Shown here: piece by piece, positions 2,208 through 30,222 of the stretch
Layout: every line of letters begins with the position of its first letter
How positions within the stretch are numbered: the stretch's first letter is position 1
From: Antechinus flavipes
Lineage: Eukaryota
Assembly: GCF_016432865.1 (NCBI RefSeq)
Contig: NC_067404.1
Span: 83,328,001-83,392,000, forward strand
Length of the DNA: 64,000 nt
Direction of reading: 5' to 3'
Made by a program: the position numbers and the translations under genes
Notes under the pieces: generated by a model
Seen by the model: the letters and a program-made list of their open reading frames with translations, nothing else
Databases searched by the model: none
What the model was told of the DNA's origin: nothing

Positions 2208-13478
<11,271 letters not shown>

Positions 13479-13719
13479 CACGGTTTCAAACTCTGAATCC
13501 TGCCAGGAGGAAAGGTGAGAACTGCTTAGTGGGATACCTGATTCAAGGACCTCTCCATCTCTTTAGCCTCCTCACAAAAGCCCCAATATCCTGTTTTCTT
13601 ACCTCAGTTTCCACCCAACTGCCACAATGTCCTCAACCTCTCCAACCTCCAGATCTCTCTGGCTTTCTTATAACCATTTCAATCTCCTCAGACTACTCGC
13701 CCCCCACTCTCCTCACACC

Positions 13720-16700
13720 CCAAACCTCTTCACCTTCCAAAAATCTTTTCACCGCTCCCCCCTCCATCTTCTCAAAGTCTCTTGGCCTCCATCCCACCCA
13801 ATCTCTTTACCTTCCAGAATACCAACATGCCCTCAGCCTCCCGCCTCTGGCCTCTGCCTCCCCCCCCAATTTCCTCACCTTCAGGAACATTAACATACCC
13901 TCAGCCTCCAATCCCGCAAGCTTCTCAGTGCCCCTCGGCCTTCGCCCAGCCCAATCTCCTTAGTTACCAATACCAACATCCCCTCCGCCTCCATCCCGCC
14001 AAGCTCCGCCCCTCAGTCTTTGCCCATCCAATCTCTTAACCTTCCATAACACCAACATCCCCTCAGCTCCCCCAAGCTCCACCCCTCAAGGCTCTGCTCC
14101 CCACCCCTCACACTTCCTAGGCTTCTGCCCCACCCCAATCTACTAAGAGTTAACAATACTAACATCCCCTCGGCCTCCACTCCCCACTTTCCTCAACTTC
14201 GGGAATACTAACATAACCATGGCCACCATCCAGCCAAGCTCCTCAGCGCCCCTCCGCCTCCACCTGCTCAATCTCTTCACCTTCCAGAATACAAATACCC
14301 TGGCTTCTGCCCCACTCAATATCCTCAACCTTACCAATACCGACAACCACGCGGTCTTCGCCCCTCCAATTTCCTCAACTTTGGGAATACTGATATTCCC
14401 TCGGCCTCCATACCACCCAATCTCTTCACCTTCCGAAATACCAACATCTCTTCAGCCTTCCCCACCCCCCCATCTCCCCACAGTCCCTTGGCTTCCGCCC
14501 AACCCAATCTCCTCAGTGTTACCAATACCAATAACCACGCGGTCTTTGCCCCCCAATTTCCTCAATTTCGGGAATACTAATATTCCCTCGGCCTCCACCA
14601 AAACCAATCTCTTCACCTTTGGGAATATTAATATCTGTGCCTCCATTTCAATAAGCTCCTCAGCGCCCCCCTTGGCCTCCACCAAAACCAATCTCATCAC
14701 ATTTCCCTTCGGGAATAGCAACATCCCTTCAGTCCTCGTCCCCCCCCCCCCCCCTCGCCCGCCATCTCCTCACAGTCCCTTGGCTTCCGCCCCGCGCAAT
14801 CTCCTCAGTGTTACCAATACCAACAACCACGCGGTCTTCGCCCCTCCAATTTCCTCAACTTCGGGAATACTAATATTCCCTCGGCCTCCATACCACCCAA
14901 TCTCTTCACCTTCCGAAATACCAACATCTCTTCAGCCTTCCCCCCCCCCCCATCTCCTCACAGTCCCTTGGCTTCCGCCCCGCGCAATCTCCTCAGTGTT
15001 ACCAATACCAACAACCAGGCGGTCTTCGCCCCTCCAATTTCCTCAACTTCGGGAATACTAATATTCCCTCGGCCTCCATACCACCCAATCTCTTCACCTT
15101 CCGAAATACCAACATCTCTTCAGCCTTCCCCACCCCCCCCCCCCATCTCCTCACAGTCCCTTGGCTTCCGCCCCGCGCAATCTCCTCAGTGTTACCAATA
15201 CCAACAACCACGCGGTCTTCGCCCCTCCAATTTCCTCAACTTCGGGAATACTAATATTCCCTCGGCCTCCACCAAAACCAATCTCTTCACCTTTGGGAAT
15301 ATTAACATCTGTGCCTCCATTTCAATAAGCTCCTCAGCGCCCCCCTTGGCCTCCACCAAAACCAATCTCATCACATTTCCCTTCTGGAATAGCAACATCC
15401 CTTCAGTCCTCGTCCCCCTCGCCCGCCATCTCCTCACAGTCCCTTGGCTTCCGCCCGCGCAATCTCCTCAGTGTTACCAATACCAACAACCACGCGGTCT
15501 TCGCCCCTCCAATTTCCTCAACTTCGGGATACTAATATTCCCTCGGCCTCCATACCACCCAATCTCTTCACCTTCCGAAATACCAACATCTCTTCAGCCT
15601 TCCCCCCCCCCCCCCCATCTCCTCACAGTCCCTTGGCTTCCGCCCCGCGCAATCTCCTCAGTGTTACCAATACCAACAACCAGGCGGTCTTCGCCCCTCC
15701 AATTTCCTCAACTTCGGGAATACTAATATTCCCTCGGCCTCCATACCACCCAATCTCTTCACCTTCCGAAATACCAACATCTCTTCAGCCTTCCCCACCC
15801 CCCCCCCCCATCTCCTCACAGTCCCTTGGCTTCCGCCCCGCGCAATCTCCTCAGTGTTACCAATACCAACAACCACGCGGTCTTCGCCCCTCCAATTTCC
15901 TCAACTTCGGGAATACTAATATTCCCTCGGCCTCCACCAAAACCAATCTCTTCACCTTTGGGAATATTAACATCTGTGCCTCCATTTCAATAAGCTCCTC
16001 AGCGCCCCCCTTGGCCTCCACCAAAACCAATCTCATCACATTTCCCTTCTGGAATAGCAACATCCCTTCAGTCCTCGTCCCCCTCGCCCGCCATCTCCTC
16101 ACAGTCCCTTGGCTTCCGCCCGCGCAATCTCCTCAGTGTTACCAATACCAACAACCACGCGGTCTTCGCCCCTCCAATTTCCTCAACTTCGGGAATACTA
16201 ATATTCCCTCGGCCTCCACCAAAACCAATCTCTTCACCTTTGGGAATATTAATATCTGTGCCTCCATTTCAATAAGCTCCTCAGCGCCCCCCTTGGCCTC
16301 CACCAAAACCAATCTCATCACATTTCCCTTCGGGAATAGCAACATCCCTTCAGTCCTCGTTCCCCCCCCCCCCTCGCCCGCCATCTCCTCACAGTCCCTT
16401 GGCTTCCGCCCCGCGCAATCTCCTCAGTGTTACCAATACCAACAACCACGCGGTCTTCGCCCCTCCAATTTCCTCAACGTCGGGAATACTAATATTCCCT
16501 CGGCCTCCACCAAAACCAATCTCTTCACCTTTGGGAATATTAACATCTGTGCCTCCATTTCAATAAGCTCCTCAGCGCCCCCCTTGGCCTCCACCAAAAC
16601 CAATCTCATCACATTTCCCTTCGGGAATAGCAACATCCCTTCAGTCCTCGCCCCCCCCCCCCCCCCCCCCGCCCGCCATCTCCTCACAGTCCCTTGGCTT

Positions 16701-19700
16701 CCTTCCGCCCCGCGCAATCTCCTCAGTGTTACCAATACCAACAACCACGCGGTCTTCGCCCCTCCAATTTCCTCAACTTCGGGAATACTGATATTCCCTC
16801 AGTCTCCATACCACCCAATCTCTTCACCTTCCGAAATACCAACATTCCCTCAGCCTCCGCCTCCTTCCAATTTCCTCACCTTCGGGAATACTAACTTCTT
16901 CTTGGCCTCCATTTCAACAAGCTCTTCAGCGCCCCCTTGGCCTCTACCCAAACCAATCTTATCATGTTCCCCTTCCGGAATAGCAACATCCCTTCAGCAC
17001 CCCTCCCCCCCATCTCCTTACTGTCCCTCGGCTTCCACCCCACCCAATCTCCTCTGTGTTACCAATGCCAACAACCATGCGGTCTTTGCCCTCCCAATTT
17101 CCTCAACTTCAGAAATATTAATATTCCCTCGGCTCTCCATACCACCCAATCTCTTCACCTTCCGAAATACCAACATCTCTTCAGCCCCCCCCCCCATCTT
17201 CTCACAGTCCCTCGGCTTCCGCCCAACTCAATCTCCTCAGTGTTACCAATACCAACAACCACACGGTCCTCGCCCCCCAATTTCTTCAACTTTATTCCCT
17301 TGGCCTCCATACCACCCAATCTCTTCACCTTCCGAAATACCAACATCCCCTCGGCCTCCGCCCCCTTCCAATTTCCTCACCTTCGGGAATACTAACTTCT
17401 TCTTGGCCTCCATTTCAACAAGCTCTTCAGCGCCCCCTTGGCCTCTACCCAAACCAATCTTATCATGTTCCCCTTCCGGAATAGCAACATCCCTTCAGCA
17501 CCCCTCCCCCCCATCTCCTTACTGTCCCTCGCTTCCACCACCCCACCCAATCTCCTCTGTGTTACCAATGCCAACAACCATGCGGTCTTTGCCCTCCCAA
17601 TTTCCTCAACTTCAGAAATATTAATATTCCCTCGGCCTCCATACCACCCAATCTCTTCACCTTCCGAAATACCAACATCTCTTCAGCCCCCCCCCCCATC
17701 TTCTCACAGTCCCTCGGCTTCCGCCCAACTCAATCTCCTCAGTGTTACCAATACCAACAACCACACGGTCCTCGCCCCCCAATTTCTTCAACTTTATTCC
17801 CTTGGCCTCCATACCACCCAATCTCTTCACCTTCCGAAATACCAACATCCCCTCGGCCTCCGCCCCCTTCCAATTTCCTCACCTTCGGGAATACTAACTT
17901 CTTCTTGGCCTCCATTTCAACAAGCTCCTCAGCGCCCCCTTGGCCTCCAAGCAAACCAATCTCTTCACGTTCCCCTTCCGGAATAGCAACATCCCTTCAG
18001 CACCCCTCCCCCCCCAATCTCCTTACTGTCCCTCGGCTTCCACCCCACCCAATCTTCTCAATGTTACCAATGCCAACAACGATGCGGTCTTTGCCCCCCA
18101 ATTTCCTCAACTTCAGGAATACTAATAGTCCCTCAGCCTCCATACCACCCAATCTCTTCACCTTCCGAAATACCAACATCTCTTCAGCCGCCCCCCCCCC
18201 CCAATCTTCTCACAGTCCCTCGGCTTCCGCCCAACCCAATTTCCTCAGTATTACCAATACCAACACCACACGGTCCTCGCCCCCCAATTTCCTCAACTTT
18301 ATTCCCTCAGCCTCCATACCACCCAATCTCTTCACCTTCCGAAATACCAACATTTTTTCAGCCGCGCCCCCCCCCCCATTTTCTCACAGTCCCTCCGCTT
18401 CCGCCCAACCCAATCTCCTCAGTGTTACCAATACCAACAACCACACGGTCCTCGCCCCCCAATTTTCTCAACTTTATTCCCTTGGCCTCCATACCACCTA
18501 ATCTCTTCACCTTCCGACATACCAACATCCCCTCGGCCTCCGCCCCCTTCCAATTTCCTCACCTTCGGGAATACTAACTTCTTCTTGGCCTCCATTTCAA
18601 CAAGCTCCTCAGCGCCCCCTTGGCCTCCACCCAAACCAATCTTATCATGTTCCCCTTCCGGAATAGCAACATCCCTTCAGCACCCCCTTCGCCCAATCTC
18701 CTTACTGTCCCTCGGCTTCCGCCCCGCCCAATCTCCTCAGTGTTACCAATACCAACAACCACACGGTCCTCACCCCCCAATTTTCTCAACTTTATTCCCT
18801 CGGTCTCCATACCACCCAATCTCTTCACCTTCCGAAATACCAACATCCCTTCAGCACCCCCCTCCCCATTTCCCACACAGTCCCTCGGCTTCCACCCCAC
18901 CCAATCTCCTCAGTGTTACCAATACCAACAACCACACGGTCCTCGCCCCCCAATTTCCTCAACTTTATTCCCTTGGCCTCCATACCACCCAATCTCTTCA
19001 CCTTCCGAAATACCAACATCCCCTCGGCCTCCATCTCCTTCCAATTTCCTCACCTTCGGGAATACTAACTTCTTCTTGGCCTCCATTTCAACAAGCTCCT
19101 CAGCACCACCTTGATCTCCACACAAACCAATCTCTTCACATTCCCCTTCCGGAATAGCAACATCCCCTCAGCCCCCGCCCCCCATCTCTTCATAGTCCCT
19201 TGGCTCCGCCCACTTTGCTGGATACCAACATCCCCTCAGCCTCCTGCTTCCGCCTCCCACCCCACTTTCCTCACCTTTGGAAATATAAACATCCCCTCAG
19301 CCTCCATCCTGCCGATCTCCTCAGTGTACCTTTCGGCCTCCAACCCACCCAATCCCTTCACGTTCCCCTTCCAGAATACCAACATCCCCTAGGCCCTCAC
19401 CCCTCATCTCCTCAGTCCCTCGGCCTCTGCCCCCCCCCCCCAATTTCCTCATCTCTGGGAATGCTAATATCTCCTAGGCGCCTCTCATCCTCTGACCCAC
19501 CCAGTCTCTTTATGTTCCCCTTCGGGAATACCAACATCCCCTTGCCCCCCCCCCCCCAATCTCATGGTCCCTGGCTTCCGCCCTCCTAATCTCCTCAGTT
19601 ACCAATACCAACATCCTTTTGGCGTCCATCCCACCCAATCTCCTCACCATCAATAATATCACATCCCCTCCGCCTTGTGACCCCTACCGCCCACTTTCCT

Positions 19701-20790
19701 CATCTTCGGGAATATTAACATCCGTTCTGCCTCCGGCTGCCTCCTCCCCCTCTCTTCAGCATCTCTTGCATCCTACCCATCCAATCTCTTCACCTTCCAG
19801 AATACCAACATCCCCTCGGCTTTCCCCACTCACCCAATTTCCTCAGTGTTACCAATACCAACAAGTCCTTGGCCTCCATCCATCCAATTTCCTCACAGTC
19901 CTTCACCCCTCCCTCCAATTTCCTCATCTTCGGGAATACGAACATCCCCTTAGCCTCCATCCCACTCAACTGCCCCACCTGTTAGCAATACCAACATGCC
20001 CCTGTCCTCCACTCTCCCATCTCTTCAGCTTCCACAGCACCAACATCCCTTTGGCTTCTGTCTCCCCACTTTCCTCATCTTGGAGAAAACTAACATCCCC
20101 TCAGTTTCCGCCCAACTCAATCTCCTCAGTGTTACCAATACCAACATGCCCTCGGCCTCGATTCCACCCAGTCTCTTCACATTCAGGAATATTAATATCC
20201 CTTCAGCCTCCATCCCACTCAATCTCCTCACCTGTCAGCAATACCAAGATCCCCTATCCCCTCAGCCTCCGCCCTCCTACTCTGTTTCCACAGCACCAAC
20301 ATCCTCAGCCCTAGCCCCCATCTCCTCAGCCTCCAAAATATCAATATCCCCTTGACCCCCACCCTCCCCGATCTCCTCAGCCTCCACAGCACCAACACCC
20401 CCTCGGCCTCCAACCTCCAATTTCCCCATTTTCTATCCCCAATCTCCTCAGCCTCCACTACATTAACATCCCTCGGCCTCCGGCCCCCCCAATCACCTCA
20501 GCTTTCTCAGGCCCTTCACAACGTCAGCATATTGTCAACTGCCTCCCCTCCCCCCAATCTCTGCAGAGTTCTGACTTCCAAAGTTTCTGACTTCTTGACT
20601 CCAGCTCAGCCTATTCACCTCCCAAATCTACTCCTGTCCCTCCCCCACTGCTCCCTCCTCCCCCCTTCGGACTCTTGACGTCAATATCTCTGCAGTCTCC
20701 TCACCTTCACAATCTCCTCAGACTCTTCAACCCCCAACTCCACAGCCTCCTCCAGAGAGCCGCAATTTCCAGAGCCTCCTCCCCCCAAAG
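13720..20790. repeat. Complex ~7 kb C-rich tandem array (~35-55 bp monomers organised in 190/285/500/665-bp higher-order units) in KIF4A intron 1
   Basis: Recurrent motif CCAATYTCYTCA...AATAYYAAYATYCCYTCRGCYTCC. The landmark GTGTTACCAAT occurs at 14516, 14808, 14996, 15189, 15471, 15661, 15854, 16136, 16427 and 16726. Identical ORF-track peptides recur at offsets of 665 and ~502 bp. Confidence 0.95.
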
Positions 20791-20799
20791 CCTCAAGCA

Positions 20800-21500
20800 C
20801 CCCTCGGCGGGCGCAGGGCCTCGTTTTGACTAGGTCCTCCCGCGCCGCGCCGCGCCCCTCCCCTCGGCGCCGCTAGGTCTCCGTGACCCCCTGCCGCACA
20901 ACCCACTTTCCACACCCCCCCCGCTGCCAGCGGCTCACCCGCAGGCCTCTGGACTCCCGGCTGCAGAGATCCCTCCCGATGCCTCCTGGAACCCGCACAC
21001 CCCGCCGTACCTTTTAACCGCCAAGTTTCAAATCAGCCTGGGAGACACCGGCCAATCAGCGAGCGGAAGAAAGGAGGCGGGGCCTCCGGGACAGAGGCGA
21101 GTCCCGGGGCGCAGGCGCAAAGCGACCCGGCTCTCGCCCCGCCCCCTCTGCATCCCGCCCCGCCCAGGGAGACACCGCGGCTGGGCTGGGCTCTCCCGAG
21201 CTCCCCGCCTGCTGGGGTCCTCTTTGCTTCCGCTTCCGGCTCTCAGTCTCCGGCACGGGCGCCCGAAAGTCCAAGCTGGCGGTGGCGCCGGAGCCCCAGT
21301 CCAGGTGAGGCGCTGCCCCGCGGGGAGCTGTCCCGGGGACAGGGGCACGAGGGCGCGGCCAACTGTCAATGGGCTGGGGGCCGCCTCGGGAACGCAAAGC
21401 CTATTGCCCGAGAAGGTTGGCTCGCCCTGGCCAAGGGCTTCTGCCCTGCCTCCTCCGAGCTGCTCTGCGCCTGCGCCTGCGCGTCCTTGCCCCCTAAATG
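20800..21500. promoter_or_regulatory. CpG-island bidirectional promoter of KIF4A and PDZD11
   Basis: CpG-dense. Contains CHR TTTGAA (minus, 21027-21032), TTGGCGG (minus, 21018-21024), CCAAT (21052-21056), several GC boxes (21076-21165) and tandem ETS/GABP CTTCCG-CTTCCGG (21227-21239). PDZD11 exon 1 donor CAG|GTGAGG is at 21304/21305. Confidence 0.85.
20939..21040 (-). other. KIF4A: Probable non-coding exon 1 of KIF4A (TSS approximate)
   Basis: Minus-strand donors GG|GTGAGC (exon end 20939) and AAAAG|GTACGG (exon end 21011) lie just downstream of CCAAT/CHR elements. The acceptor of the ATG-containing exon is at 13500-13501. Confidence 0.55.

Positions 21501-26432: not shown

Positions 26433-30222
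<3,790 letters not shown>

What the first reader, a model, noticed from the sequence alone, without database searches (positions are those of the whole stretch)
13720..20790. KIF4A intron 1 is almost entirely a 7-kb satellite-like array with layered, centromere-style architecture
Seen: the interval between KIF4A's promoter and its ATG exon is filled by variants of one ~50-bp motif (CCAATYTCYTCA...AATAYYAAYATYCCYTCRGCYTCC). Monomers are diverged and irregular at both edges (13.7-14.4 kb, 19.2-20.8 kb) and organised into homogeneous higher-order units in the middle. I do not recognise it as any transposon or described satellite. Inference: an old minisatellite expanded in situ through successive unequal-exchange bursts inside a transcribed mitotic gene, directly beside its cell-cycle promoter. 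A CpG-containing intronic macrosatellite in an X-syntenic region invites comparison with X-linked structural repeats such as DXZ4; any such role is speculation.
Basis: partly seen in the sequence, partly recalled or inferred. Interest (0 to 1): 0.75.

Follow-up and report, generated by a model that had tools for sequence, protein, structure and literature searches.

The report
Repeat array filling KIF4A first intron
The first intron of the mitotic kinesin gene KIF4A in this marsupial is almost wholly a 7-kb array of 35-50-bp repeats that grew in place and is shared with related species. It is a large example of an ordinary minisatellite, not an X-chromosome structural element.

Summary
From about 13,560 to 20,800 the window is one head-to-tail array of about 143 monomers of roughly 35 and 50 bp. 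Two internal blocks of higher-order repeats have copies 88-95% alike. Both edges are only 76-80% alike.

KIF4A lies on the minus strand, with its ATG exon at 13,359-13,499. The array fills about 96-97% of the gap to the CpG-island promoter that KIF4A shares head-to-head with PDZD11. Exon 1 is inferred, because no RNA runs were on offer.

Contigs from independent runs show the array in the same species, and, collinear with the promoter, in two relatives about 1.5% and 4% diverged. A fourth species has a rearranged version. K-mer depth fits one locus and roughly the assembled copy number.

No monomer copy lies elsewhere in the window. The array has no CTCF consensus, no Rfam hit and no Pfam domain. 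The DXZ4 comparison fails: units are 35-50 bp, not 3 kb.

The one mechanistic lead is composition. The KIF4A sense strand is 44% G (GC skew +0.6), with 64 R-loop initiation motifs against 0 antisense. This resembles a switch region but is untested.

This scan has already logged 52 minisatellite notes in this genome, including a 5.6-kb higher-order array on other DNA. Verdict: a new member of a known kind, of low to moderate interest.

The parts
13359..13499 (-). KIF4A exon 2, holding the ATG at 13478. The acceptor AG is at 13501-13500 and the donor GT at 13358-13357.
   Evidence: Translation of 13359-13478 on the minus strand gives 40 residues. They match residues 1-40 of the mouse KIF4 motor domain, PDB 3zfc, at E 3e-17. 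Splice sites were read from the sequence.
13098..13259 (-). KIF4A exon 3 (kinesin motor domain). Further motor exons lie near 7.3 kb and 2.5 kb.
   Evidence: Pfam Kinesin PF00225 matches at E 7.7e-6, 2.2e-5 and 1.8e-12 for the three pieces.
13500..20938 (-). KIF4A intron 1 (inferred). The 3' end is fixed by the exon 2 acceptor. The 5' end is at 20938, or at 21010 if the alternative donor is used.
   Evidence: Donor-like sites CGG|GTGAGC (exon end 20939) and AAG|GTACGG (exon end 21011) were read on the minus strand. No RNA runs were available.
13560..14100 (.). Left edge of the array, made of diverged, irregular monomers.
   Evidence: Best internal identity is 76-85% and 31-mer multiplicity is 1. 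Monomer types cannot be classified. CpG observed/expected is 0.36-0.56.
14100..16900 (.). Higher-order block A. It holds 4-monomer units of 188-193 bp (types B-C-A-F) and 6-monomer units of 282-284 bp (types B-C-A-H-E-M). These combine into 472- and 662-bp super-units.
   Evidence: Self-matches run up to 1,492 bp at 92.6%, with offsets of 190, 284, 472 and 662 bp. TRF gives periods 188, 193 and 282 at 93-94% matches. CpG observed/expected is 0.88-0.96.
16665..19210 (.). Higher-order block B. It holds units of about 11 monomers, 490-520 bp long (types I-J-E-K-L-D-A-F-B-D-G). It shares monomer types with block A.
   Evidence: Self-matches of 1,195 bp at 94% (offset 520) and 570 bp at 89% (offset 493). 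Block A against block B is 80-85%.
19210..20800 (.). Right edge of the array. Monomers are diverged and fade into C-rich, non-repeated sequence after about 20,500.
   Evidence: Best internal identity is 77-80% and 31-mer multiplicity is 1. This stretch is covered collinearly with the promoter by contigs of organisms A (0 differences), B (about 1.5%) and E (about 4%).
20800..21500 (.). CpG island that is probably the bidirectional KIF4A/PDZD11 promoter. On the minus strand the CCAAT box (ATTGG) is at 21056-21052 and the CHR element (TTTGAA) at 21032-21027.
   Evidence: GC is 0.62-0.71 and CpG observed/expected 0.66-0.77. The motifs were read. KIF4A is listed among CHR genes in PMC4176359.
21224..21304 (+). 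Probable PDZD11 non-coding exon 1, ending at the donor CAG|GT (GT at 21305-21306). The start of the exon is not mapped.
   Evidence: The donor was read. PDZD11 coding pieces on the + strand lie near 22.39, 23.19, 23.56 and 23.86 kb; they were named by eye against the human protein recalled from memory, not by a search.

Best explanation
This is a locus-specific intronic minisatellite. A 35-50-bp pyrimidine-rich unit (purine- and G-rich on the KIF4A sense strand) multiplied in place inside KIF4A intron 1. The likely mechanisms are replication slippage and repeated unequal exchange.

Groups of 4, 6 and about 11 monomers were later re-amplified as higher-order units in the middle of the array. 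The edges no longer take part in exchange and have drifted apart.

The array is transcribed as part of the KIF4A pre-mRNA and removed with the intron. It is tolerated because its sense strand has no acceptor-like sites, so it cannot create cryptic exons.

Because the sense strand is extremely G-skewed directly downstream of an active cell-cycle promoter, the array should be prone to co-transcriptional R-loops and G-quadruplexes. I take that as a by-product of composition and not as a selected function.

Shown: the anatomy, the strand, the gene context, the presence in related species and single-locus depth. Inferred: the position of exon 1, the mechanism of growth, neutrality and R-loop formation.
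For: - Array anatomy and layering.
- Blocks A and B share monomer types (A, B, D, E, F) and are 80-85% alike, so they come from one ancestor.
- CpG observed/expected falls from 0.9 in the core to 0.4-0.55 at the edges. This fits older edges, or edges that are less protected from methylation.
- Gene context: KIF4 exon 2 on the minus strand, kinesin exons downstream of it, PDZD11 on the plus strand, and a CCAAT box plus CHR element in the CpG island (PMC4176359).
- Not dispersed: nothing else in the 64-kb window resembles it beyond poly-C hits with E of 0.01 or worse.
- Independent runs: organism A contigs match with 0 differences. Their depth divided by the assembly's own 31-mer multiplicity is 7-12 in the core against 5-9 in the unique flank. 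So there is no large pool of copies elsewhere, and the copy number is about right.
- Age: organisms B (about 1.5% diverged) and E (about 4%) have single contigs running from the right edge of the array into the promoter, so the array predates those splits. Organism F has core-type monomers at 88-92% identity, in a different order, at up to about 12 times its unique depth. That is the pattern expected from array turnover.
- Sense-strand composition: 44% G, 69% purine, 14 G4 motifs against 0, 64 R-loop initiation motifs against 0 antisense and 3 in 13 kb of gene body, and 0 acceptor-like sites against 1.6 per kb in the gene body.
- GC skew predisposes to R-loops on transcription (PMC3787257 abstract).
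Against: - No RNA data were available, so neither the exon 1 to exon 2 splice across the array nor transcription through it was seen.
- No whole-genome or transposon-library search was possible. 'Single locus' rests on contig k-mer depth, which the tool itself warns is a poor copy-number measure.
- Short-read contigs cannot confirm the array's length.
- The high CpG observed/expected in the core (0.9) and only a 2.4-fold excess of CpG transitions among copies could mean the array is kept unmethylated. That would hint at more than a neutral passenger.
- Higher-order copies differ by 5-7%, so amplification is not recent, and the 'bursts' cannot be ordered in time with confidence.
Confidence: 0.8

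Rival explanations
1. The array is a working element, not a passenger. On this view it is a switch-region-like, R-loop- and G4-forming extension of the KIF4A CpG-island promoter. It would stay unmethylated in dividing germ cells and would tune KIF4A or PDZD11 transcription, polymerase pausing or replication timing.
For: - Sense-strand GC skew of +0.6 over 7 kb, starting about 150 bp from the likely exon 1.
- 60 of 64 R-loop initiation motifs are followed by at least 40% G, and none lies on the other strand.
- The core meets CpG-island criteria, with GC 0.53-0.55 and observed/expected 0.72-0.96 over about 4.5 kb.
- CpG transitions among copies are only about 2.4 times the non-CpG rate.
- The array has persisted in at least four species.
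- GC skew is linked to R-loops and unmethylated CpG islands (PMC3787257).
Against: - No R-loop, methylation or expression data exist for this locus.
- G-rich strand bias is a general trait of minisatellites (from my own knowledge).
- Sequence and order are not conserved in organism F, so any constraint would be on composition only.
- About a quarter of the listed cross-species differences fall at CpGs, roughly 4 times their share of positions. This suggests at least some germline methylation.
- This genome has many comparable minisatellites.
Confidence: 0.1
2. The monomer belongs to a dispersed transposon-derived or genome-wide satellite family, for example an overgrown SINE tail as seen elsewhere in this genome. 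This locus would be one copy among many.
For: Earlier notes of this scan describe SINE-tail and SINE-head minisatellite families in the same genome (unchecked). Organism F shows core-type contigs at up to about 12 times its unique depth.
Against: - No similar sequence lies in the other 56 kb of the window.
- In organism A, core contig depth divided by within-array multiplicity equals the unique depth within a factor of about 1.7.
- No SINE-like head or tail is recognisable at either edge by eye.
Confidence: 0.05
3. The array's length or its higher-order structure is an assembly artefact, either over-expanded or collapsed.
For: Poly-C runs of 8-20 bases and near-identical units are error-prone in noisy long-read assemblies. 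No contig in any run spans the core.
Against: - Independent short-read contigs of the same species match core and edge pieces with 0-1 differences. Their depth scales with the assembly's own copy number.
- Copies differ by 5-7%, enough for long reads to place them.
- If the genome is Antechinus flavipes, as earlier notes say, the reference is a male assembled from about 100x PacBio reads. The X would then be a single haplotype (PMC9290055; the species identity is unchecked).
Confidence: 0.03
4. The array is an X-linked structural macrosatellite of the DXZ4 or FIRRE kind, which organises the inactive X through CTCF.
For: The region is syntenic with human Xq13 by gene order KIF4A-PDZD11-RAB41 (the human order is from my own knowledge). 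The array contains CpGs.
Against: - Units are 35-50 bp and higher-order units at most about 660 bp, against 3-kb DXZ4 units (PMC3287207).
- A CTCF core consensus allowing 1 mismatch finds 0 sites in the array and 2 elsewhere in the window, which is the chance level.
- The whole array is 7 kb.
Confidence: 0.02

Closest known systems
G-rich minisatellites (VNTRs) with internal higher-order structure
   Same: Unit length of 35-50 bp, array length of 7 kb, and strict head-to-tail order. There is a strong purine/pyrimidine and G/C strand bias. The location is euchromatic and genic. Edges are diverged and the centre is homogenised. Organisation differs between related species.
   Different: It is larger than most. 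It fills almost a whole first intron next to a promoter. It has two distinct multi-monomer blocks of 4, 6 and about 11 monomers. Length polymorphism within the species was not tested.
The 5.6-kb higher-order minisatellite between RPL18 and SPHK2 found earlier by this scan in the same genome (note s1-196603)
   Same: It is in the same genome and of similar size. It also has nested higher-order repeats, lies beside housekeeping-type promoters, and is reported as shared with another dasyurid (unchecked note).
   Different: It is a different locus, intergenic and not intronic, with a different seed of about 110 bp. No sequence relation could be tested, and the sequence look-up was blank.
Immunoglobulin class-switch regions
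   Same: They work alike on paper. Both are kilobase-scale intronic tandem repeats directly downstream of a promoter and G-rich on the non-template strand. That is the arrangement known to give long co-transcriptional R-loops (from my own knowledge; GC skew and R-loops in PMC3787257). Here the sense strand is 44% G with 64 initiation motifs.
   Different: There is no relation in sequence, locus or biology. No AID hotspot logic was examined, and R-loop formation is untested. This is an analogy of composition only.
DXZ4 macrosatellite
   Same: Both are tandem, contain CpGs and lie in X-syntenic regions.
   Different: DXZ4 has 3-kb units in 12-100 copies and binds CTCF on the inactive X (PMC3287207). 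This array has 35-50-bp units and no CTCF motif.
Centromeric satellite higher-order repeats
   Same: Both have monomers grouped into higher-order units that are more alike than neighbouring monomers, with diverged monomers at the array flanks.
   Different: This array is 7 kb, not megabases. It is a single euchromatic locus inside a gene, and its depth is not elevated genome-wide. Its higher-order copies are only 88-95% alike.

Membership tests
Minisatellite / VNTR | Tandem head-to-tail units of roughly 10-100 bp | tested here: met
   About 143 monomers, with spacing modes at 49-52 and 34-37 bp. All self-matches are direct.
Minisatellite / VNTR | Array of about 0.5 to tens of kb at a single euchromatic locus | tested here: met
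   The array is 7.2 kb inside KIF4A intron 1. No copy lies elsewhere in the window. K-mer depth fits one locus. No genome-wide search was possible.
Minisatellite / VNTR | GC-rich with strand asymmetry (one G-rich strand) | tested here: met
   GC is 0.53-0.55. On the + strand C is 44% and G 10%, and GC skew is about -0.6.
Minisatellite / VNTR | Copy number variable between individuals | not testable with these tools
   Only short-read contigs were available. One contig of organism B skips 277 bp, about one 282-bp unit, at unique depth. This hints at a between-species difference only.
Macrosatellite of the DXZ4 type | Kilobase-scale repeat unit (3 kb in DXZ4) | tested here: not met
   Monomers are 35-50 bp. 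The largest higher-order offset is 662 bp. The definition is from the PMC3287207 abstract.
Macrosatellite of the DXZ4 type | CTCF binding site in each unit | tested here: not met
   A CTCF core consensus allowing 1 mismatch finds 0 matches in 13.5-20.8 kb. This is a motif test only; binding was not assayed.
Centromeric or genome-wide satellite | Very high copy number, in long arrays or many loci | tested here: not met
   Organism A core contigs have depth 21-47 against 5-9 in unique sequence. That ratio equals the 2-5-fold multiplicity already present in this one array.
Transposon-derived repeat (SINE-tail minisatellite, or internal VNTR of a composite element) | Array continuous with a recognisable transposon body, or monomers found inside dispersed copies | tested here: inconclusive
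   No similarity to any other sequence in the window and no Rfam family. No transposon library was on hand, so an old, eroded seed element cannot be excluded.
R-loop-forming sequence (works like; not a family claim) | G-cluster initiation zone followed by an extension zone of at least 40% G on the non-template strand of a transcribed region | tested here: met
   A script of my own, patterned on my recollection of the published R-loop-forming-sequence rule, finds 64 initiation motifs on the sense strand. Of these, 60 are followed by at least 40% G, and 80% of 100-nt windows have at least 40% G. The antisense strand has none. Actual R-loop formation and transcription through the array were not tested.

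The most novel reading that the evidence does not exclude
The array could be a selected, composition-constrained element and not junk. It would be a 7-kb, G-skewed, CpG-rich extension of the KIF4A/PDZD11 CpG island that forms long co-transcriptional R-loops or G4s in dividing germline and somatic cells, as switch regions do. That would keep it unmethylated and would modulate elongation, pausing or origin activity at an X-linked mitotic gene. Turnover of sequence with retention of the array across dasyurids would be the signature.
Probability: 0.08. Interest if true: 0.55.

Novelty: new member of a known kind. Interest (0 to 1): 0.22.

Why it matters
As it stands, this is a clean, well-bounded example of how a minisatellite grows and layers itself inside a gene. 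Sister-species data could date the steps, and the case adds to a genome that this scan already shows to be rich in such arrays.

It would matter more if the extreme sense-strand G skew next to a strongly cell-cycle-regulated promoter turned out to form R-loops in vivo. The array would then be a natural, X-hemizygous model for how long R-loop-prone repeats are tolerated in an essential mitotic gene. It would also show whether such repeats shield CpGs from methylation.

For annotation, the practical points are these:
- KIF4A is on the minus strand.
- Exon 1 is unmapped.
- The 726-codon open frame inside the array is an effect of base composition.

Tried and rejected
- **Coding potential.** The + strand has open frames up to 726 codons, but they have no Pfam family. 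Most repeat periods are not multiples of three, and the frames run antisense to KIF4A. I reject them as a consequence of G-poor composition.
- **U1/5' splice-site decoy array.** The sense strand has 40 sites matching at least 7 of 9 consensus positions, mostly AAGGTGAAG or AAGGTGAGG. Mononucleotide shuffles give 42 ± 6, so there is no enrichment beyond composition.
- **NF-Y sink.** CCAAT occurs 109 times against 15.6 expected, but none sits in the RRCCAATSR context. The true promoter box does not fit that context strictly either: it reads GGCCAATCAGCG, so the last position (A where S is required) fails. I did not pursue this.
- **CTCF.** No motif in the array.
- **Rfam.** No family in 12.5-22.5 kb.
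- **RNA evidence.** No RNA run was offered, so exon 1 and the intron status of the array could not be confirmed.
- **Findings index.** Look-ups by words (five words together) and by sequence were blank.
- **Orthologous introns in other species through protein look-ups.** This needs a joined spliced protein. Exons were searched one at a time by reference, and PDZD11 exons were recognised by eye.
- The N run at 29,086-29,654 was left untouched.
Full report
**1. The observation**

Tandem Repeats Finder reports overlapping arrays between 14.7 and 20.4 kb. Periods are 51-52, 87-88, 173-193, 282 and 472-491 bp, and scores reach 1,894. Nothing comparable lies elsewhere in the window.

Composition changes sharply at 13.5 kb and again at 20.8 kb. 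GC stays at 0.52-0.55, while GC skew on the + strand sits at -0.55 to -0.69 for 7 kb. The stretch 13,560-20,800 is C 43.9%, G 9.8%, T 25.2% and A 21.1%.

An 11-base anchor taken from the monomer, with up to two mismatches, occurs 143 times in 13.4-21.0 kb and 30 times in the remaining 56 kb. Spacings cluster at 49-52 and 34-37 bp. So there are long (about 50 bp) and short (about 35 bp) monomers. The short ones lack the AATACCAACAT part.

Every self-match is in direct orientation.

**2. Layering**

A self-BLAST gives long off-diagonal matches.
- 14,106-15,574 against 14,768-16,240: 92.6% over 1,492 columns, offset 662.
- 15,758-16,531 against 16,042-16,830: 94.1%, offset 284.
- 16,665-17,848 against 17,185-18,353: 94.0%, offset 520.
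- 18,157-18,724 against 18,650-19,211: 88.9%, offset 493.
- Matches between the two regions are only 80-85%.

Per position, the best non-self identity is as follows:

| Region | Best non-self identity |
|---|---|
| 13.6-14.0 kb | 76-78% |
| 14.2-18.3 kb | 93-95% |
| 18.4-19.2 kb | 90-91% |
| 19.2-20.4 kb | 77-80% |
| beyond 20.4 kb | none |

Clustering the 143 monomers at 85% identity turns the middle of the array into regular strings. Block A reads (B-C-A-F)n and (B-C-A-H-E-M)n. Block B reads (I-J-E-K-L-D-A-F-B-D-G)n. The 13 monomers at the left edge and about 28 at the right edge fall in no recurrent type.

Blocks A and B share types A, B, D, E and F, so they descend from one set of monomers. 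CpG observed/expected follows the same layering: 0.88-0.96 in block A, 0.72-0.86 in block B and 0.36-0.56 at the edges. 'Layered' is a fair description.

**3. Gene context**

The minus strand of 13,359-13,478 translates to [40 protein letters not shown]. This matches residues 1-40 of the mouse KIF4 motor domain (PDB 3zfc) at E 3e-17. KIF7 is the next-best match at E 5e-6.

Further minus-strand pieces at about 13.1, 7.3 and 2.5 kb hit the Pfam kinesin motor at successive profile positions. KIF4A therefore runs right to left in this window.

Exon 2 is 13,499-13,359. It has a good pyrimidine tract and AG acceptor at 13,501-13,500 and a GTAAGG donor.

To the right of the array is a CpG island at 20.8-21.5 kb, with GC up to 0.71. 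On the minus strand it carries ATTGG (21,056-21,052) followed 19 nt later by a canonical CHR element, TTTGAA (21,032-21,027). That is the arrangement typical of G2/M genes, and KIF4A is in the CHR gene table of Müller et al. 2014 (PMC4176359).

On the plus strand, a CAG|GT donor at 21,304/21,305 is followed by pieces that I recognise as PDZD11 coding exons near 22.39, 23.19, 23.56 and 23.86 kb. The recognition is by eye against the human protein recalled from memory. The order KIF4A-PDZD11-RAB41 is that of human Xq13.1 (from my own knowledge).

KIF4A exon 1 could not be mapped, because no RNA run was available. Two donor-like sites exist, with exon ends at 20,939 or 21,011. The position of the CHR favours 20,939.

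Intron 1 is thus 7,439 or 7,511 bp long. The array (13,560-20,800, 7,241 bp) makes up 96-97% of it.

**4. Is it real DNA, single-locus and old?**

Public runs were coded. I laid contigs of four runs on 15,400-21,399 at 88% or more likeness.

- **Organism A** matches with 0-1 differences over every listed piece, including a continuous 19,075-21,399. It is the window's species.
- **Organism B** has contigs collinear over 19,075-21,399 with about 1.5% differences, plus core pieces.
- **Organism E** has a single 2,161-base contig running from 19,587 through the promoter, with 58 substitutions and 31 gap positions in 1,813 bases. It also has core pieces 3-7% different.
- **Organism F** covers part of the promoter (6 differences in 272 bases). 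In the array it has only core-type pieces at 88-92%, with many rearranged joints. These include short contigs at depth 35-127 against 10.9 for its unique contig. It has no right-edge sequence at this threshold.

So the array, in this position, predates the splits of A from B and from E. A more distant relative has its own reshuffled and homogenised version, which is what array turnover predicts.

For organism A, I divided contig depth by the mean 31-mer multiplicity of the same stretch within the window. This gives 9.0, 12.3, 8.8 and 7.0 for four core pieces, against 4.9-9.4 for four single-copy pieces. The family therefore has no large reservoir elsewhere in that genome, and the assembled copy number is right to within a factor of about 1.7.

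The tool warns that contig depth is a poor copy-number measure, and no contig spans the core. This is support, not proof.

Earlier notes of this scan name the genome as Antechinus flavipes (unchecked by me). If that is right, the reference is a male assembled from about 100x PacBio reads, with chromosome 7 as the X (PMC9290055). That would make a gross mis-assembly or haplotype mix-up of a 7-kb array unlikely.

**5. What it is not**

- Nothing else in the window resembles it. The best hits are poly-C matches with E of 0.01 or worse.
- There is no Rfam family in 12.5-22.5 kb.
- The long plus-strand open frames, up to 726 codons, have no Pfam domain. They follow from the scarcity of G, and therefore of stop codons.
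- A CTCF core consensus with one mismatch allowed finds no site in the array and two elsewhere, which is the chance level.
- DXZ4 is defined by 3-kb units bound by CTCF (PMC3287207). Both features fail here.
- A centromere-type or genome-wide satellite is contradicted by the depth data.
- I could not search a transposon library, so an eroded seed element at the origin of the array is not excluded. This same genome is reported to hold SINE-tail minisatellites.

**6. How it most likely works**

The anatomy is what unequal exchange and slippage produce. The interior is repeatedly re-amplified in multi-monomer units, and the edges drop out of register and decay.

Substitution divergence between higher-order copies is about 5% (69 mismatches in 1,492 columns for the longest pair). 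That is of the same order as the divergence between organisms A and E. The main amplifications are therefore not recent, and the array is not being homogenised quickly.

In the KIF4A sense direction the array has these properties:
- It is 44% G and 69% purine.
- It has 281 runs of three or more G, 15 runs of eight or more, and 14 canonical G4 motifs against none on the other strand.
- Under a rule of the R-loop-forming-sequence type, written from memory, it has 64 initiation motifs. Of these, 60 are followed by at least 40% G. The antisense strand has none, and 13 kb of KIF4A gene body has 3.

Positive GC skew downstream of a promoter predisposes to R-loops (PMC3787257). The closest functional analogy is an immunoglobulin switch region, but nothing here tests R-loop formation.

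The same purine bias leaves no acceptor-like site on the sense strand, against 1.6 per kb in the gene body. That explains why so large an insert can sit in an essential gene without creating cryptic exons. Donor-like motifs are no commoner than composition predicts.

Among higher-order copies, transitions at CpG (17 of 310 cells, 5.5%) are only about 2.4 times those at other C/G (45 of 2,009, 2.2%). Ten of the 38 listed cross-species differences touch a CpG in one species or the other. This is compatible with partial protection from germline methylation. The numbers are small and I draw no conclusion.

**7. Verdict**

The 'expanded in place' reading is supported. The DXZ4 and centromere comparisons are not.

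This is a large, well-structured, lineage-shared intronic minisatellite, a new member of a known kind. This scan has already recorded 52 minisatellite notes in the same genome, including a 5.6-kb higher-order array between RPL18 and SPHK2 on other DNA.

Its one unusual trait is the extreme sense-strand G skew over 7 kb directly behind a cell-cycle promoter. That trait makes a specific, testable prediction of R-loops and low methylation, to which I give about 8-10%.

I built no joined spliced protein model of KIF4A or PDZD11, and searched exons singly by reference. I did not touch the N run at 29,086-29,654.

Noticed in passing
window 20800-21500: KIF4A (minus strand) and PDZD11 (plus strand) sit head-to-head on one CpG island. 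On the KIF4A strand an inverted CCAAT box (21056-21052) lies 19 nt upstream of a canonical CHR element, TTTGAA (21032-21027). GC boxes lie further upstream. This is the classic layout of a G2/M promoter, conserved in a marsupial.
   Followed up: partly
window 15444-17624 (+): A 726-codon open frame, and many of 90-280 codons, run through the array on the C-rich strand. They have no Pfam match and shift frame between repeat units. They are a trap for gene callers, not a gene.
   Followed up: yes
window 15400-19200, run X10 (organism F): A more distant species holds core-type monomers at 88-92% identity, in a different order, at up to about 12 times its unique depth. It lacks the right-edge sequence. 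It seems to have its own, possibly larger, homogenised array.
   Followed up: partly
window 16083-16361, run X3 (organism B): One contig at single-copy depth joins 16083 to 16361 and so skips 277 bp, about one 282-bp six-monomer unit. This possibly marks a unit-number difference between sister species.
   Followed up: no
window 17296-18969 (-): Six AATAAA or ATTAAA hexamers lie on the KIF4A sense strand inside block B units. Whether any causes premature polyadenylation is unknown.
   Followed up: no
   Followed up: no
window 13860-19557: Fifteen poly-C runs of 8-20 bases (G runs on the sense strand) recur at fixed places in the higher-order units. Contigs from unrelated loci attach to them as loose ends in the read lay-out. 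Their lengths are the least trustworthy letters of the array.
   Followed up: partly
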